Made by a program: the position numbers and the translations under genes | Shown: in pieces, positions 1,528-58,039 of the stretch | How the letters are laid out: each line of letters opens with the position of its first letter | How positions within the stretch are numbered: the stretch's first letter is position 1 | Origin: Zootoca vivipara | Lineage: Eukaryota | NCBI RefSeq assembly: GCF_963506605.1 | Contig: NC_083282.1 | Coordinates: forward strand, 23,498,001-23,562,000 | DNA length: 64,000 bases | Direction: 5' to 3' | The notes under the pieces: generated by a model | Database searches by the model: none | Told to the model about the DNA's origin: nothing | The model's input: only the letters and a program-made list of their open reading frames with translations

Positions 1528-3132
1528 GTGTGGATTCAGGCCAACACTCCCCTTGTGCTCCCCCAATATTAAAGTCCATGATGTGAGACATTTTAAAAAT
1601 CTAATTCATGTGGTAACCTTTCAAAGCAATTTTGAAAGTCGCTTCTTTTGCCTCTTTTGTCAGTAGTTTACTGGATCATCTCTTTGCAATGCAGGTGAGT
1701 ACCTCTATGTTCATTGTTTATTAAAAGAATTTATGTATTGCCCTTTCGTGTGGAAATACCAAGTCAACAAAACAATGTTAAAACCTCAATCACAACAGAA
1801 CTACTTTGAAATATCAGGCGTAGTTAAGCAGGAGGAATGCCAGCAGTCGGTATTACTGCACCCCGACAGGCAAAAATAAGTCACACGCAAAACTGCTCTT
1901 TAAAAATAACCCTTTTGCCATGAAAAACGGTGCTGGGGGTGGGAAATATCGTAAGAATCTAAGCAGGTAGGAATCAGAACAAATTATTGAGGCTGTTACA
2001 GTGTGAAATTTGAAGATTGCAAATATCTTCCTTAATGTTATTACTTGGTTGCATTAAAAATGCATCGCCTATATTATGTGGCTCATTATTCATGAAGCAG
2101 GTTCCATACCTTTTGTCTGCCAGAGTAACTGAAGGAAAAGGTAAGAGGAGACAGCGGCTGTGCGCACACCTTTATGTCTCTCACTGAATTTTTTATGGCC
2201 CCTCCAGCTAGCCAGTTGGTGAAGCTCTGTGGCCGCACAAGAGTGGAAAAGCAGAGCTATCTCAGAAAGACTAACCCTTTCAGGAGCTAATTTGAGCTTG
2301 TGTTCATTCACGCCAGCGGTGATTAAATTACCTATCGAGTGCGCTGAGCTATCATGATTCAGGGCACGGGAGAACAAGGTGGATTTCACCTGATTGATTT
2401 GAAACGCGCGAGACGGGATGGGGAAGGGGAGGAACAGAAGAGCGGAGGGGAAGAACGGGCAACAAAGAAACCACCCCCTGTTTGCTGATGTTATTATTTG
2501 ATCCTGACAGAAAATGGAATGTTTTTTTAAAAAAATTATTTTGCTAGCGTTAAAATTTTCCATTTCCCACCCCACCCCCACACTTCCTTCAAGGAGCTCT
2601 GGATTAGTCCTGCCCCTTTCCCTTGCTTCCCCATCGGAATAACCCCGTGAGGTACCGTAGGTTAGGTCAGACTGACGCACACCCAACGAGCTTAATAGTT
2701 GAGCAGGATCTGAACACAGGTCTCCTGGCTCAGTGGTACAATTGGGGAACTTGTACACGTCACCTTCTCCTTTCTGCAGGCAGCAATTAAATATGCCATG
2801 ATTTGCCCCTGCTCCTGGCCACAGGCACATTTGGCAGCAGCAGCAGGATGTGGGAAGCCACCTGCCATTTTAATTTCCCCAAACGCCACAGCAGCAACAC
2901 TGTTGTCAGGTACTCAAGGGCACTGGGGGAATATTTAAACGATGAGTGGCTGCTTCAGGGTTCCAGGCTGCTTCAAGGGCCCCACTGGATCCCTCAACCA
3001 CTGGCCTTGGAAGCCGGGCAGAAAGTCAACAGAAGTTAAGTCGCTGCCCCACTCATGTCCCTGAGGGCATGCTTCTCCTCCCTTCTGTATAAGGGATAAC
3101 TAAAGTGATGGCTGAATGGCCAGAATTTGCCT

Positions 3133-3452
3133 TTACCTGAAAGGGCATCTCCACCCCCATCGTTCTGCCCGGACACTGAGGTCCAGCGCCGAGGGCCTTC
3201 TGGCGGTTCCCTCACTGCGAGAAGCCAAGTTACAGGGAACCAGGCAGAGGGCCTTCTCGGTAGTGGCACCTGCCCTGTGGAACGCCCTCCCACCAGATGT
3301 CAAAGAGAAAAACAACTACCAGACTTTTAGAAGACATCTGAAGGCAGCCCTGTTTAGGGAAGCTTTTAATGTTTAATAGATTATTGTATTTTAATGTGTT
3401 GGTAGCCGCCCAGAATGGCAGAGTGGCTGGGGAAACCCAGCCAGATGGGCGG

Positions 3453-3500
<48 letters not shown>

Positions 3501-3501: not shown

Positions 3502-3613
3502 AATTCACTCTTGGTGCTGGGTTGCCCGGGTTATCCAAGACACCTGGATGCCAGTGATCAGCCTTCTAACAGTTGCATTTTTTATTATTATTACTGAAGC
3601 AGGGAGCTGTGAA

Positions 3614-4139
3614 CATGGGCGTACCCAGGGGGGGCAGCTGCCCCCCCGAAGCTAAAAAAAGAAAGAAAGACAGCTTGCGGCATACACTTTTGTCCTTCTC
3701 GGTTGGGTACACGATCTTGCCACAGCGGGCACAGCGTAAGACCCCAGCGGAAGGCAGCGGTGGGAGTTGCCCCCGGCTGCCTGGAAAAGGCTGGAAAGCT
3801 GCGTCTGTGGCAAGGCTCGTAACACTGCAGAAGCAAGCGGGAGGAGGAAGAGGGAGAGGGCGTGAGGGAAAGAGAGCGCTCACACCAGCACGCACACCAG
3901 CACACACCAGCCTACAATCGGCGCGCACTGTTTTTTTCCAGGGTAAAAAGAGCAGAGGCCGGCGGGGAGGAGTTGCGGAGAACCGCATGACCGCCCCCTC
4001 CCCTCTGGGGGGCGTGGACATTGACCACGCCTCCTGGGAGGATCCCGGTCACGTCATCGCCAGCCAGCCAATCGGGTGGCTGGGGGTGGGGTGTGTGGCT
4101 TGCCTGCCCCCCCTAGTTTTGATCCTGGGTACGCCCATG
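3614..4139. mobile_element. Non-autonomous hAT element with captured GC-rich host sequence (Pack-hAT candidate)
   Basis: Perfect 16-bp TIR CATGGGCGTACCCAGG / CCTGGGTACGCCCATG; perfect 8-bp TSD GCTGTGAA (3606-3613, 4140-4147); CpG-rich interior; no transposase. Confidence 0.92.
3695..3733 (-). pseudogene. LASP1: Captured fragment of LASP1 first coding exon (LIM domain start, [13 protein letters not shown]) inside hAT element
   Basis: 13 consecutive codons match the recalled LASP1 N-terminus [23 protein letters not shown] (NEBL/LASP2 has V instead of I); no ATG and no remainder of the LIM domain. Confidence 0.85.
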
Positions 4140-4776
4140 GCTGTGAAACTGGTAAGACCAGCAGCAGCATGGGAAGAGAGGGTGCACAACGCCCCCCCCG
4201 TCAAAGTTGGGCCCCCCCAGCTGGCTTCCCAACCCCAGGGGAAAGGCACATTCATTTCATTTTCCTTTTTTATTTTTGAAAATAAGCCTGCATCCCCTGG
4301 CATCTCATCTAATTTGGACTCCAGTTCATCTGATCAATCTTTATCACACCTGTTCGTTATACGCATATAAATGCCACGGAGAGCAAATATCAAGCTGGGG
4401 GTGGTTGTGGAAGCCTGAATCTATAAAAATGTAAGGCACACATCTAGCAGGGATATTTACTGCCCATTGCCTGATAAAGATTAACTTGGTGTCGGCCATA
4501 AAATCTTTCAGTAAAAAAAAAAAAAAAAATTAAGAAAGGGAGTACTTTCAGTGGGGAACTGGCCCAGCATTCTGATCATTAGTTTCTTCTGTGAATGAAC
4601 AGAAAAAACAAGGAGAGCACCTGGAAATTAAAAGGATCTGTTAAAGTTTGGGTTTTAATCTCCCTTTTTGCTCCCCGGGTAGCATGCACAAGATACAGAA
4701 CTTGAAATAAGACAGCAGGAAATATTCCCTTCATATATGGTTTGAAATTCACACAAAGCAGCTGAACAAATGACAG

Positions 4777-4821: not shown

Positions 4822-4892
4822 GCCCAACACTTGTGTGGTTTTGGTGTTTGTTGGTCAGTGACCATTTTTCACCTTAACTGCTACTTCTATGC

Positions 4893-5028
4893 CAGGCACC
4901 CCCAAACTGCGGCCCTCCAGATTTTTCTGCCTACAACTCCCATGATCCCTAGCTAACAGGACCAGTGGTCAGGGATGATGGGAATTGTAGTCCAGAACAT
5001 CCAGAGGGCTGAAGTTTGGGGATGCCTG
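4893..5028. mobile_element. hAT MITE (136 bp)
   Basis: TIR CAGGCACCCCCAAACT / AGTTTGGGGATGCCTG; perfect TSD TTCTATGC (4885-4892, 5029-5036). Confidence 0.95.
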
Positions 5029-5204
5029 TTCTATGCCCTCATCCTGCTCTGCCTTTCATCCACACTCTTGTTACAGGGTTACAAACTTGAACAAAATATT
5101 GGAGGGCTGGGCAGGTAAGCCCTAACTCACATAATCAGTCACAAGATGCACCAATTGAATGGCAATGTCCACCAGCTTTTTTGCGGGGGCTGGCCCTCTC
5201 TCAA

Positions 5205-5288: not shown

Positions 5289-5378
5289 CATAGCTGCCAA
5301 GTTTTCCCTTTTCTCACGAGGAAGCCTATTCAGCATAAGGGAATTTCCCTTAAAAAAGGGGAGAACTTGGCAGCTATG
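5289..5378. mobile_element. 90-bp hAT MITE
   Basis: TIR CATAGCTGCCAAGTT / AACTTGGCAGCTATG; perfect TSD CCCTAGGA; near-identical inverted copy at 56460-56550. Confidence 0.95.
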
Positions 5379-6779: not shown

Positions 6780-7129
6780 AAGGTAAAGGGACCCCTGACC
6801 ATTAGGTCCAGTCGTGACCGACTCTGGGGTTGCGCGCTCATCTCGCATTATTGGCCAAGGGAGCCGGCGTACAGCTTCCAGGTCATGTGGCCAGCATGAC
6901 AAAGCCACTTCTGGCGAACCAGAGCAGCACACGGAAACGCCGTTTACCTTTCCGCTGTAACGGTTCCTATTTATCTACTTGCATTTTTATGTGCTTTCGA
7001 ACTGCTAGGTTGGCAGGAGCTGGGACCGAGCAACGGGAGCTCACCCTGTCACAGGGATTCGAACCGCTGACCTTCTGATCAGCAAGCCCTAGGCTCAGTG
7101 GTTTAACCCACAGCGCCACCTGGGTCCTC
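6780..7129 (-). mobile_element. Sauria SINE, full length
   Basis: tRNA-like head with B-box GGTTCGAATCC, conserved body and ACCTTT tail; 13-bp TSD GGCTGACAGGTTA (6767-6779, 7130-7142). Confidence 0.95.
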
Positions 7130-7160
7130 GGCTGACAGGTTATGCAGGCCTAATGTATAG

Positions 7161-8717: not shown

Positions 8718-9168
8718 TAAGAATGGAGGAAAAATCTGATTCGGTTCACATTTGCAGGTGATGCTGCTAAATTCACTTTCTGAAACAATAAACAAACCAA
8801 TACACAGCCATTTCTGGAATTTGGCACTTCTCTGAACTTTGCAACGTTGTTCTACACTACAGTCAAGTAATATGTAGAAAAATGCATATACCGAAGAGCG
8901 AATTAGGTAGGGTAAACTGTACAAATGCATCTATTAGTGAAAATAATACGCACAAATGCACCATTCTAGAGAAAGTCGCTTTGCAAAAATGTGCATATTA
9001 GGCAAAACTGCAGAAGAAGGTTTATCGTTAGGATAAATTTACGGTAAAATGCAAATGGGAGCCGCTTTAAAAAACAACAACACTGTAACGTGATGTGGAG
9101 AACTGAGTTTAGGAATGGAAAATTTAGAACCTGTGAGAAACCAAAACGGACAGATTCAGTCACCCCTG
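8718..9168. mobile_element. Old AT-rich non-autonomous DNA transposon-like repeat
   Basis: Reverse-complement similarity to 1128-1527. Confidence 0.5.
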
Positions 9169-22734: not shown

Positions 22735-23455
22735 TCTGGCGAAGGTGGTACATTTCAGGAAAGCTGGAACAGAAGAGGGCTTGTTTACAGGAGAGGAGCA
22801 GGTAGGGCCTGTACAACCTGGGAGGGTAGCCCATCTTGGAGAAGGAAAACTATTATCATAAACCAGGCATCCCCAAACTGTGGCCCTCCAGGTGTTTTGG
22901 CCTACAACTCCCATGATCCCTAGCTGACCAGTGGCCGGGGGAGATGGGAATTGTAGTCCAAAACATCTGGAGGGCCGAAGTTTGGGGATGCCTGTCATAA
23001 ACCTCCGCTACCTTTTGGCTGTACTCATTTGTGAGAAAGGCTTTTGGGGTAAGCCCTGAGGAACAATCCATAACCTTCTGCCTTTTGGGACACCTCTGGG
23101 AAAAGGCTAAGGAATAAGCTCTATACAAATACGGGATGGAGTCCCTAAGGCGGTGGGATGGCGTGTTGTATGCCTCTTTCCGGCAACTCCTGCAGTGAAG
23201 GCGGTGCCAAATGTATTGCTCTGCTTTCCTTTGAACCACGTCAGCGAGGCCGAGAGGTGGGTATTGTCATCCGGGGCAGCCCTGGACCTCCATGCACACT
23301 GCCCAGGTTTGTGCCCCAGAGAGGTCACTTTGGTGCTGTCAATGCATCAAAAACAACAACGTGGGAAGCAGCAGGGGTTGTGATTCTGCAGCTTTTTAAC
23401 TTCACCCCCCCCCCAGGCGCACTCCATTGTCTCTTGAGACAGGCAGGTGCCAAAG
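22735..23455 (+). mobile_element. Putative non-autonomous RTE derivative (5' UTR-like region joined to RTE 3' end)
   Basis: 22780-23030 is homologous to 47905-48040 (-) and has the GGAGAAGGAAAACT motif recalled from RTE 5' UTRs; it ends in the same terminus as the RTE at 15308. Confidence 0.6.
22864..22994. mobile_element. hAT MITE nested in the RTE derivative
   Basis: TIR CAGGCATCCCCAAACT / AGTTTGGGGATGCCTG; perfect TSD TCATAAAC. Confidence 0.95.
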
Positions 23456-55202: not shown

Positions 55203-55338
55203 CAGGCACCCCCAAACTGCGGCCCTCCAGATGTTTTGGCCCACAACTCCCATGATCCCTAGCTAAGAGGACCAGTGGTCGGGGAAGATGGGAATTGTAG
55301 TCCAAAACATCTGGAGGGCCAAAGTTTGGGGGTGCCTG
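55203..55338. mobile_element. hAT MITE (136 bp)
   Basis: TIR CAGGCACCCCCAAACT / AGTTTGGGGGTGCCTG; perfect TSD GTTTAAAC. Confidence 0.96.
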
Positions 55339-55660: not shown

Positions 55661-55847
55661 AAGACTGGACTTTAGCTGCTATAAAACAGAGCAGCTAAAG
55701 TTTTGCCCAGAGCCAGTGTTTGAAATCTGCAAATGAGCTCCACTGGCTGTCGCTCCATTTCCAGGCTCAATTTAAAGTGCTAGTCATTACCTATAAACAC
55801 ACCTCTACAGTTCAGGACTCAGGATCGTAGGAAGATACCTTCTACTG

Positions 55848-56408
55848 CAGTGTTTCTCAACCTTTTTTGGGCCACGGCACACTTTTCTATGAAAAAAAAT
55901 CCCGCGGCACACCAACTCTGTGCCGCCCTATATTTAGTTTAGTTTGGAGGGGAGACGTACCGGTAAAGCATGCCGCTGAAGAACTGCTGCGCGGTAGCCA
56001 GGCGGACCCACCAGGCGCAGAGCCTGCGGAGCGAGCGGGGACAGACCCCAGGCGGGCAGACACGGGCGCGCAGCTGCCGCCGCCTCCCTCCCAGCCGCCC
56101 CAGGCAGCCGCCGCCGCTCTGGCCCGGCGAAGGGAAGCCCTGCGCAGCCTTCCCCGCCTGCCTCCTCCTCCCCAGGAGGGCGATTTGCATTGTCACGTGC
56201 CTGGCGGCCGCCAATAAACAGCGCTGACCCGCCAGAAAGGAAGCCGGTCGGGTCACGACGCGGGCACTCGCCTCGCGTCATGACCCGGCCGGCTTCCTTT
56301 CCGGCGGGTCAGCGACGTGACAGTGCAAATCGCCCTTCTCGTCGCGGCACACCAGCCAGTGTTTCGCGGCACAGTAGTGTGCCGCGGAACACCGGTTGAG
56401 AAACGCTG
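55848..56408. mobile_element. Non-autonomous hAT (Charlie/Buster-type) element with captured CpG-rich sequence (Pack-hAT candidate)
   Basis: TIR CAGTGTTTCTCAACC / GGTTGAGAAACGCTG; perfect TSD TTCTACTG (55840-55847, 56409-56416); subterminal CGCGGCACAC repeats; CpG-island-like interior. Confidence 0.93.
55961..56023 (-). other. Exon-like cargo with both splice sites inside hAT element
   Basis: Acceptor TCTGTCCCCGCTCGCTCCGCAG, 63 nt, donor CG|GTACGT; frame LCAWWVRLATAQQFFSGMLY(R) has G/C at 18 of 20 third positions. Confidence 0.6.
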
Positions 56409-56459
56409 TTCTACTGAGTCAGATCGTTGGCCACCTCATTCCTGACTGTCTACGCTGAC

Positions 56460-56550
56460 CATAGCTGCCAAGTTCTCCCTTTTTTTAAAGGGAAATTCCC
56501 TTATGCTGAATAGGCTTCCTCGCGAGAAAAGGGAAAACTTGGCAGCTATG
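56460..56550. mobile_element. 91-bp hAT MITE
   Basis: TIR CATAGCTGCCAAGTT; perfect TSD ACGCTGAC; inverted near-copy of 5289-5378. Confidence 0.95.
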
Positions 56551-58039
56551 ACGCTGACTGAAAGCAGCTCTGCAGTATTTTAGACAGCAAGTCTTTTCCA
56601 GACTCACCTGGAGATGCCAGGGATCGAACCTGCAGCCTTCTGCAGACAAAGAAACGGAATTAAAGGTCTATCTCCTCCCACACTGTCCAAGCTACACCTG
56701 GCCATTTCTCCTGCAAGGGAAAGGCAACCCTTTTGTGTCTGTCAGCTGCTAGCTATCACAGATAACAAATGCAAAGAGCTTACTTCAAAGATGTCGTATC
56801 AATGGAGCAATATAATAAAATCCTTTCATCAATAGACAGCCAGGGGGGTGGGGGTGGTATATTTATACAGAAGAACTTCCTTATAGTGTTAAGGGTATGG
56901 AGAATCAGCACAGCGAGGTAACAATCTGCACAAGGCACATAAAGAACTAGGGGTGGAGGAGAAATTTGGATCGGTCTGTATTTTAACGCAATTTGCCCTT
57001 CCCAAAACAACACATGAACCAAACTGCAGCTATCTTTTGCAACGCACACTTCTCCAGCTTGTGTGATCCAACCAAACAATGTCCATATTAGCAAAAACAA
57101 GCACACAAAATTCATTATATTAGGAGAAATTGTTTGCTAACCTGCTCACAAGCTAGGAATTGCCAACATGAGAAGTTATGAGTGTTTATTAGAAATACGA
57201 TTATATTACTCACGTTTTGAAGAGAAGGCAATCTTTCTATTAAGTGAATGTGGTGGCAGGTATAAATCATTACCTGTGCAGGTAACAACTGAAACTGAAC
57301 GGCGTCAAATGTGGGGCAGAGGACAGTGTCTCAGATCGGACAGTCCCAAATTCAAAACCTTGTTCAGCCACTGAAGCTCACTGGTGACCTTAAGCAGCCT
57401 TCCCCAACCTGGTGCCCCCCCCCCAGAAGTTTTGGGACATCACTCCCATCAGTCCCACCCAGTTTTGCCACTGGTCAATGATGGTGGGAGTTTCACATTG
57501 CCACCTGCAAGACGCCAAAGCCAGGGAAATCTAAGTTATTCATTGTGGCAGAAGCAATATGTTATGGGATGTGTTGGAGCCAGGAAACCACCTTGGGTAC
57601 TCAAAGGCGGGATATATATTTAAATAAGAAAAGAAAGTTCAACCTAGGCTACTTTGCAGGGCTTTTGTGAAGACACAAAAGGGAGGGATGGGAACAGAGA
57701 AAAACCTGTTTCTTGGGTCTTAGGAACCATGGTGCAAAATTAATTTTGAACAAGTTTCCAAAATATATAGCAGATATGAAAGACAGCAGATTTTTTTTTA
57801 AAAAAACACAGACTCATAAATCTCTAGAATGCATAAAAAATAAAAATGCAATGTAGTCTTCACGGTTTCATCACAAAGAAGCCATGCACCACTTTATAGT
57901 ACAGTACTTTATAAAATGCTTATGGAAAAACTTAGGGAAATACGGATTCAGATGCAAAGGGAGCAGCAGATGGAAGAATGCCAGAATAATCCACTTAGGT
58001 AAACATATCATCAATACAAGACTCTATGAATTTACTCAC

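What the first reader, a model, noticed from the sequence alone, without database searches (positions are those of the whole stretch)
3614..4139. hAT element carrying a piece of LASP1 exon 1 (Pack-hAT)
Seen: a 526-bp element with a perfect 16-bp TIR and 8-bp TSD whose minus strand encodes [13 protein letters not shown] (3695-3733) followed by DK. Known: LASP1 begins [23 protein letters not shown], and 8-bp TSDs mark the hAT superfamily. Inference: a host first-exon fragment (possibly with VNCL deleted) was captured by a non-autonomous DNA transposon and moved here. Such capture is well known for plant Pack-MULEs but sparsely documented in vertebrates.
Basis: partly seen in the sequence, partly recalled or inferred. 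Interest (0 to 1): 0.9.

Follow-up and report, generated by a model that had tools for sequence, protein, structure and literature searches.

The report
Lizard transposon carrying a tiny LASP1 scrap
A 526-base cut-and-paste transposon, present in tens of copies in this lizard species, carries CpG-rich filler DNA that includes a dead 41-base scrap of the LASP1 gene's first coding exon: a real but small example of a known kind of gene-fragment capture.

Summary
There is a perfect 16-bp TIR (3614-3629 / 4124-4139), an 8-bp TSD (GCTGTGAA), and [13 protein letters not shown] on the minus strand at 3733-3695. Such TIR+TSD pairs occur five times in the window and never in 30 shuffles.

The element is a real, mobile, non-autonomous transposon.
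- Its flanks are single-copy.
- Its interior lies at roughly 20-60 copy-equivalents in the source species (at least 18 distinct contigs over the LASP1 piece).
- Its right terminus lies at thousands of copies.
- The central filler is essentially absent in two related species.
- The ~45-nt terminus recurs in two unrelated AT-rich eukaryotic metagenome contigs.

The LASP1 reading is only partly right. PDB's best hit is LASP-1 (13/13 identical), but identity stops on both sides: no ATG/MNPN upstream and no VN(CL) downstream. In the relatives, the contigs that match the piece align only over 3693-3736. So about 41 nt (codons 5-17) come from LASP1, about a tenth of the cargo, not a promoter plus first exon.

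The rest is CpG-island-like filler of unknown source. The hAT assignment is provisional: the TSD and TIR length fit, but CATGG breaks the YARNG motif and no transposase partner was found.

It is a new member of a known kind (Pack-TIR, or Ds-like filler capture). This scan has already noted many similar elements elsewhere in this genome.

The parts
3606..3613 (.). Left copy of the 8-bp target-site duplication, GCTGTGAA
   Evidence: (D8)
3614..3629 (+). Left terminal inverted repeat, CATGGGCGTACCCAGG
   Evidence: (I2); the same 16-mer begins the termini in metagenome contigs L001 and L002
3628..3647 (.). Perfect 20-nt G/C palindrome next to the left TIR. It is absent from the right arm and from L001 and L002.
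   Evidence: (self-hit 15-34 against 3647-3628)
3651..3693 (-). A-rich filler (T-rich on the minus strand) between the left terminus and the LASP1 piece; origin unknown
3694..3734 (-). LASP1-derived patch: codons 5-17 ([13 protein letters not shown]) plus one flanking base on each side. No start codon; a dead passenger.
   Evidence: translation; 1zfo LASP-1, E 1e-4, 13/13; table 3 (relatives' contigs align only over 3693-3736; most contigs in the source species carry 3704C and 3722G, both synonymous CpG sites)
3735..3904 (.). GC-rich filler of unknown origin (GC 0.63, CpG o/e 0.62). About 23-34 copy-equivalents in the source species, under 1x in the two relatives.
   Evidence: table 2; no Pfam or PDB match
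3905..4095 (.). Internal region shared with a larger subfamily (about 45 rising to about 400 copy-equivalents in the source species, about 6-13 in the relatives). On the minus strand it holds CCAAT-, CRE- and GC-box-like motifs.
   Evidence: table 2; motifs read directly from the sequence and not tested for function
4096..4139 (-). Right terminal ~44 nt, including the right TIR (4124-4139). This is the high-copy family backbone.
   Evidence: bin 4079-4165: about 123,000 against a baseline of about 22; 88.6% identical over 44 nt to L001 and 94.6% over 37 nt to L002
4140..4147 (.). Right copy of the 8-bp target-site duplication, GCTGTGAA
   Evidence: (D8)

Best explanation
This is a non-autonomous cut-and-paste DNA transposon with an 8-bp TSD and a 16-bp TIR, most likely of the hAT superfamily. 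It belongs to a young subfamily restricted to this lizard lineage.

Only about 35-45 bp at each end are transposon backbone. The interior is CpG-island-like 'filler' DNA, most plausibly patched in by template switching during repair or replication of an ancestral element. One patch is a 41-bp in-frame scrap of LASP1 exon 1 (codons 5-17).

After the filler was acquired, the composite element was moved in trans by a transposase encoded elsewhere and reached tens of copies. This copy is one of them. The LASP1 scrap has no start codon and is a dead passenger.

Shown: the termini, the TSD, multicopy status, the 13/13 match to LASP-1 and where it stops, and conservation of the terminus elsewhere. 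Inferred: the superfamily, LASP1 as the DNA donor, and the template-switch mechanism.
For: - TIR and TSD are exact and far beyond chance.
- Flanks lie at single-copy word depth (about 21-37 beyond 4166). The interior lies at 500-1370, the bin 3992-4078 at 8,900 and the bin 4079-4165 at 123,000 in the source-species run X1. At least 18 distinct contigs cover the LASP1 patch and 7 cover 3818-3824.
- The middle (3731-3904) is under 1x in the related species X13 and X14, so the amplification is lineage-specific.
- The terminal ~45 nt recur at a sharp boundary in two unrelated AT-rich eukaryotic metagenome contigs.
- LASP-1 is the best PDB hit, 13/13 identical, with mismatches directly on both sides. 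The relatives' matching contigs align only over 3693-3736, one of them at single-copy depth.
- There is no transposase or any Pfam domain in the element.
- The cargo has GC 0.62 and CpG o/e 0.61, against 0.44 and 0.36 for the window.
Against: - The LASP1 gene of this species could not be fetched, so DNA-level parentage and breakpoints are inferred from a peptide match and from alignment ends in a summary table.
- Word depth is not a true copy number.
- No second copy with a different TSD and no empty site was actually seen; the read tables were swamped by the neighbouring SINEs.
- The terminal CATGG departs from the hAT YARNG motif, and no autonomous partner is known.
- In X14 the two contigs that match the patch sum to depth 313, more than a single-copy gene should give. 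This is unexplained.
Confidence: 0.7

Rival explanations
1. One reading: the element captured the LASP1 promoter, 5'UTR and start of exon 1 as one contiguous block. The region around the ATG and the VNCL codons was later lost or scrambled.
For: The layout on the minus strand looks like a gene start: CCAAT-, CRE- and GC-box-like motifs at 4000-4090, then about 260 nt of GC-rich sequence, then the coding piece. Other notes of this scan describe whole first-exon captures in this genome (unchecked).
Against: The 12 nt upstream of the Cys codon match ATGAACCCCAAC (the human sequence, from memory) at only 3 of 12 positions. The relatives' contigs stop at 3736 and 3693, with the same ends in two species, and nothing in either relative aligns to 3737-3817. 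The motif-bearing stretch 3992-4095 is at about 400 copy-equivalents and also present in the relatives, so it belongs to a wider transposon subfamily rather than to a LASP1-specific cargo.
Confidence: 0.15
2. The LASP1-like scrap did not come directly from LASP1. It arrived second-hand, from another transposon, a pseudogene or a duplicated fragment that already carried it.
For: In X14 the two contigs matching the patch sum to depth 313, against a baseline of about 30-50. This suggests the patch may be multicopy in another species in a different context.
Against: In X13 the single matching contig has single-copy depth (7.4, against a baseline of 8-14). The ultimate source would still be LASP1.
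Confidence: 0.08
3. The 13-residue identity is chance, and the cargo has nothing to do with LASP1.
For: The match is short. phmmer gives only 25 bits (E 1e-4 against PDB alone), and a library-wide search did not list LASP1 at E of 0.001 or less.
Against: An exact 13-mer of this composition is expected about 1e-5 times by chance. The two sites where this copy differs from most family contigs (3704, 3722) are both synonymous third positions at CpG sites. Related species hold a contig matching just this stretch.
Confidence: 0.04
4. The window is the LASP1 locus itself, and the TIR and TSD are coincidental.
For: None beyond the peptide.
Against: There is no ATG/MNPN, no other LASP1 motif in six frames of the window, and the interior is multicopy between single-copy flanks. 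TIR plus TSD never arose in shuffles. The terminus is shared with unrelated contigs.
Confidence: 0.01

Closest known systems
Pack-TIRs of animals (Tan et al. 2021, Nat Commun, PMC8277862)
   Same: A TIR DNA transposon, usually hAT, whose interior is host-derived DNA. Multicopy cases are spread by transposition with distinct TSDs. The proposed origin is template switching or gap filling.
   Different: Their definition needs one unambiguous parent covering 80-120% of an internal sequence longer than 100 bp at 90% identity or more. Here the identifiable parent (LASP1) accounts for about 41 of about 430 nt. They found only 4 multicopy cases among 370, with 3 loci in the frog example, and none in lizard or snake because no hAT was annotated there. 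This family appears to have tens of copies.
Maize Ds2 and Ds-like (Ds-l4) elements with filler DNA (Du et al. 2011, BMC Genomics, PMC3260210)
   Same: hAT non-autonomous elements that share little more than the TIR with the autonomous element. They carry variable filler DNA that only occasionally matches gene fragments, and they form clusters of related filler.
   Different: That case is a plant. The autonomous partner (Ac) is known there, and those Ds-l elements did not respond to Ac. Here the partner is unknown, and recent mobility is inferred from the perfect TIR and TSD and from lineage-specific amplification.
Orphan non-autonomous hAT families and hobo_AC derivatives of Anolis carolinensis (Novick et al. 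2011, PMC3014272)
   Same: Lizard hAT families with 8-bp TSDs that share only their TIRs with any autonomous element and have taken in extraneous genomic DNA. They are young and have tens to thousands of copies.
   Different: None of the listed Anolis TIRs contains CATGG. All of those families fit YARNG and this one does not. The extraneous DNA reported there was mostly other repeats, not gene pieces.
Rice Pack-MULEs
   Same: Amplified TIR elements carrying GC-rich fragments from the 5' ends of genes, often mosaics from several loci (established knowledge, not tested here).
   Different: They belong to the Mutator superfamily, with 9-11-bp TSDs and long TIRs. They are plant elements with thousands of copies.

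Membership tests
hAT superfamily | 8-bp target-site duplication | tested here: met
   GCTGTGAA on both sides. P, Merlin and a few other superfamilies also make 8-bp TSDs, so this alone is not sufficient.
hAT superfamily | Short TIR (about 10-25 bp) with the terminal motif YARNG | tested here: not met
   The length of 16 bp fits. The terminus reads CATGG, with T at position 3 where R is expected. Novick et al. state that all Anolis hAT families fit YARNG.
hAT superfamily | Mobilised by a transposase with the hAT dimerisation domain (an autonomous partner with the same TIR) | not testable with these tools
   There is no transposase in the element. The hAT transposase on L001 (Dimer_Tnp_hAT) lies outside the element that starts at L001:2351, and a different TIR-like sequence lies upstream of it.
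hAT superfamily | Target preference nTnnnnAn (Ac type) or nnnTAnnn (Buster type) | tested here: inconclusive
   GCTGTGAA fits only position 7 of the Ac pattern. One TSD cannot settle this.
Pack-TIR sensu Tan et al. 2021 | Internal sequence of 100-5000 bp between two termini of the same TIR element | tested here: met
   About 430 bp lie between termini that share the 16-bp TIR.
Pack-TIR sensu Tan et al. 2021 | A unique parental locus matching the internal sequence at 90% or more over 80-120% of its length | tested here: inconclusive
   The source genome could not be searched. The indirect evidence says LASP1 covers only about 41 nt, which would fail this criterion. The parent of the rest is unknown.
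Non-autonomous multicopy TIR element | No transposase; several dispersed copies | tested here: met
   No Pfam hit. At least 18 distinct contigs and about 20-60x baseline depth over the interior in X1, with single-copy flanks. Individual copies and their TSDs were not seen.
LASP1 gene (true exon 1) | Start codon and MNPN before CARCGK, VNCLDK after TEK, and further LIM or nebulin exons nearby | tested here: not met
   The translation reads ...[21 protein letters not shown].... The LASP-1 chain has N before and VN after. No other LASP1 motif occurs in six frames.

The most novel reading that the evidence does not exclude
Squamate hAT-like transposons of several unrelated TIR families may habitually take up CpG-island DNA from the 5' ends of genes and then amplify it to tens of copies. 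That would be an animal counterpart of rice Pack-MULEs, missed by the one systematic animal survey because lizard hATs were not annotated.

In this window, the only two clear CpG-island-like stretches in 64 kb both sit inside 8-bp-TSD TIR elements of different families: this one, and 55848-56408 with a SPIN-like TIR. The scan's notes list dozens of similar cases in this genome.
Probability: 0.3. Interest if true: 0.65.

Novelty: new member of a known kind. Interest (0 to 1): 0.33.

Why it matters
On its own, this element is a dead 41-bp gene scrap inside transposon filler, with no expected function.

Its value is as one data point. In this lizard, non-autonomous hAT-like elements with CpG-island-like cargo are mobile and multicopy. 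The published animal survey found multicopy Pack-TIRs in only 4 of 370 cases and none in squamates.

If the pattern holds genome-wide, it offers a vertebrate system for two questions: how DNA transposons acquire and spread the 5' ends of genes, and whether they scatter promoter-like sequence.

Tried and rejected
1. **Fetching a lizard LASP1.** I wanted to align exon 1 at the DNA level. The search for homologous proteins with the 160-aa open frame found no candidate. The search of protein representatives listed only six unrelated proteins that match in several repeated stretches at 41-44% identity, and no LASP1.

2. **Empty site or insertion polymorphism.** No joint across 3614-4139 was listed. 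The tables were swamped by the SINE-type repeats at 3122-3469 and 4862-5035, and the relatives' contigs barely cover the immediate flanks. No verdict.

3. **RNA evidence.** The raw RNA run X21 laid almost nothing on the cargo (depth of 1 or less over 3644-3991). This gives no support for expression and no view of LASP1 mRNA. It is not evidence of silence.

4. **Other coding or RNA content.** Pfam, PDB searches of the other frames and Rfam found nothing.

5. **Scans elsewhere.** The viral contigs held none. The three bacterial-genome hits cover only 20-24 nt, at about the number expected by chance for a 19-mer; L003 appears to read as coding sequence across the match (MGVPRI..., my reading).

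6. **Findings search by sequence.** Blank.

7. **'VNCL deletion' and 'splice donor after DK'.** Rejected, because the match to LASP-1 already ends at TEK.

Full report
**Observation.**
- CATGGGCGTACCCAGG at 3614-3629 is mirrored perfectly at 4124-4139 (pair I2).
- GCTGTGAA flanks both ends, at 3606-3613 and 4140-4147.
- The minus strand 3733-3695 reads [13 protein letters not shown], then DK.
- A scan I wrote for perfect TIRs of at least 11 bp bounded by a perfect 8-bp direct repeat finds five such elements in the window and none in 30 shuffles.
- The TIR and the element occur only once in the window.

**Is it the LASP1 locus?** No.
- The frame is open for 160 codons (4048-3569), but it has no Met near the Cys: the sequence reads ...[10 protein letters not shown]....
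- The flanks are single-copy while the interior is multicopy.

**How much is LASP1?** About 41 nt, codons 5-17.
- Against all PDB chains, the 37-residue translation hits LASP-1 (1zfo) best, at E 1e-4, with [13 protein letters not shown] identical 13/13.
- The printed alignment shows N before the Cys and VN after the Lys in LASP-1, where the element has R and DK. Identity therefore stops at both edges.
- The read laying agrees. In the related species X13 and X14, the contigs that cover this spot carry 3704C and 3722G. Their from_end values (11 and 14 in both runs) place the ends of the aligned pieces at 3693 and 3736.
- I checked on record 17 of table 8 that from_end counts to the end of the aligned piece.
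- In X13 that contig has single-copy depth (7.4, against a baseline of 8-14), as a LASP1 exon would.
- Nothing in either relative aligns to 3737-3817 (bin depths 0.42 and 9.5).
- The donor piece is thus 3694-3734, with no ATG, no 5'UTR and no VNCLDK. The 'VNCL deletion' is not needed.
- In the source species, 18 contigs carry C at 3704 and G at 3722. Both are synonymous third positions in CpG context, so this copy shows ordinary CpG decay relative to its family.

**Family and copy number.**
- In run X1 (the same species; it may be the assembly's own sample), the flanks beyond 4166 sit at word depth of about 21-37.
- The element's bins sit at 1318 and 1373 (3557-3730), 743 and 502 (3731-3904), 981 (3905-3991), 8,906 (3992-4078) and 123,305 (4079-4165).
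- The tool warns that summed word depth is not a copy number. However, at least 18 distinct contigs cover the LASP1 piece and 7 cover 3818-3824, so many loci are involved.
- My rough reading is tens of copies of this cargo, a few hundred of the 3992-4095 stretch, and thousands of the right terminus.
- In the two relatives the termini are also repeated (X14: 114,304 in the last bin) but the middle is under 1x. The filler-bearing subfamily therefore expanded in this lineage only.
- I saw no individual second copy with its own TSD and no empty site. The output tables were filled by the flanking SINE-type repeats.

**Termini elsewhere.**
- A 22-mer of the right end occurs in two JGI metagenome contigs.
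- Both are AT-rich and look eukaryotic. Both share about 37-45 nt, starting sharply at CATGGG and diverging afterwards.
- L001 also carries a 602-aa hAT transposase ORF (Dimer_Tnp_hAT above the Pfam cutoff). That ORF lies outside the element that starts at L001:2351, and a different TIR-like sequence sits upstream at about 101. I read this as a nested insertion, not as the autonomous partner.
- These contigs confirm that the ends are a real transposon terminus with a wide, possibly horizontally spread, distribution.
- The three hits in bacterial genomes are chance 20-24-mers. The viral contigs held none.

**The cargo.**
- The element has GC 0.62 and CpG o/e 0.61, against 0.44 and 0.36 for the window.
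- Apart from the LASP1 patch, nothing matches Pfam, PDB or Rfam.
- The minus strand of 4000-4090 holds CCAAT-, CRE- and GC-box-like motifs. This stretch belongs to the larger subfamily of about 400 copy-equivalents and is also present in the relatives, so it is not LASP1-specific cargo.
- The single strand folds better than shuffles (z -4.5). That is expected from the TIR and the 20-nt palindrome at 3628-3647.

**Mechanism (inferred).** The layout is a backbone of about 35-45 bp at each end, a mosaic interior, and a very short gene patch with sharp edges. This is what abortive gap repair or replication template switching leaves in hAT elements.
- Maize Ds2 and Ds-l4 carry 'filler DNA' that only occasionally matches genes (PMC3260210).
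- Tan et al. propose gap filling, or fork stalling plus template switching followed by transposition, for animal Pack-TIRs (PMC8277862).
- Once formed, the composite kept its termini and was moved in trans. The perfect TIR and TSD and the lineage-specific expansion argue for recent mobility.
- The LASP1 scrap is a passenger with no coding potential.

**Comparison and novelty.** The kind is known.
- Tan et al. found 370 Pack-TIRs in 100 animal genomes, 208 of them hAT, but only 4 multicopy.
- Their table gives the lizard (anoCar2) 0 Pack-TIRs, with 0 annotated hAT among 77 consensus DNA elements, and the garter snake 0 of 3. Squamates were effectively unsurveyed.
- By their own criteria, this element would probably fail with LASP1 as parent, because LASP1 covers only about a tenth of the interior.
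- Novick et al. describe Anolis hAT families that share only TIRs with autonomous elements and incorporate extraneous DNA. None of their TIRs contains CATGG, and all of theirs fit YARNG, which this terminus does not.
- I therefore call the element hAT-like, not a proven hAT.

**Context from this scan.** The scan's earlier notes, which are unchecked AI notes and used only as leads, list many hAT elements with first-exon or exon pieces in this same genome, several judged multicopy. So this kind of thing has been found before on other DNA of this genome.
- One noted case lies in my window. I verified that 55848-56408 has a SPIN-like TIR (CAGTGTTTCTCAACC, one mismatch), the TSD TTCTACTG and CpG o/e 0.98.
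- A 400-bp sliding scan found CpG-island-like stretches at only three places in the window: these two elements, and a borderline stretch at 6780-7130 that looks like a tRNA-derived SINE (my reading of the sequence).

**Limits.**
- The species' LASP1 DNA could not be obtained.

**Verdict.** This is an ordinary new member of a known class, and its only notable aspect is the genome-wide pattern it belongs to.

Noticed in passing
window 55848-56408: A second TIR element of a different family: SPIN-like TIR CAGTGTTTCTCAACC (one mismatch between the arms) and TSD TTCTACTG. Its interior is a strong CpG island (GC 0.65, CpG o/e 0.98).
   Followed up: partly
window, whole: A 400-bp sliding scan (GC at least 0.55, CpG o/e at least 0.6) flags only three places in 64 kb. 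Two are the interiors of 8-bp-TSD TIR transposons (3601-4100 and 55701-56600). The third (6780-7130) is borderline and looks like a tRNA-derived SINE.
   Followed up: partly
window 5289-5378 and 56460-56550; 22864-22994 and 55203-55338: Two further MITE families with perfect TIRs and 8-bp TSDs. One is 90 bp with TIR CATAGCTGCCAAGTT (TSDs CCCTAGGA and ACGCTGAC). The other is about 130 bp with TIR CAGGCAYCCCCAAACT (TSDs TCATAAAC and GTTTAAAC, which fit nnnTAnnn).
   Followed up: no
window 3122-3469 and 4862-5035: Extremely abundant repeats (summed word depth in the millions in all three species, and transcribed in the RNA run). The first ends in a (TAA)15 microsatellite at 3455-3500. The second includes a hairpin at 4919-5002 with a weak, sub-threshold match to the mir-5408 family (32 bits against a gathering score of 90).
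   Followed up: no
L001 (metagenome contig Ga0126373_10117308) 569-2377 and 2351-2391: An AT-rich eukaryotic contig with an intact-looking 602-aa hAT transposase ORF (DUF4371, hAT dimerisation domain, Spin-doc zinc finger). The CATGGGCGTACCCAGG-type terminus starts inside its last eight codons, which looks like a nested insertion. The near-identical terminus in a lizard and in an AT-rich organism hints at horizontal spread.
   Followed up: partly
L002 (metagenome contig Ga0079224_100549421) 1-190 and 1472-1658: An AT-rich contig whose ends repeat at 94-98% identity with a period of about 1.47 kb, suggesting a tandem repeat. It holds one copy of the same transposon terminus at 409-445 and a 53-nt inverted repeat at 904-1017.
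   Followed up: no
window 3628-3647: A perfect 20-nt G/C palindrome (G7-CAGCTG-C7) directly inside the left TIR. It is absent from the right arm and from the metagenome relatives. It could be a hairpin-forming site relevant to fork stalling.
   Followed up: no
window 3693-3736, as seen in run X14: In related species D, two contigs that match just the LASP1 patch sum to word depth 313, against a baseline of about 30-50. This is more than a single-copy exon should give and remains unexplained.
   Followed up: no
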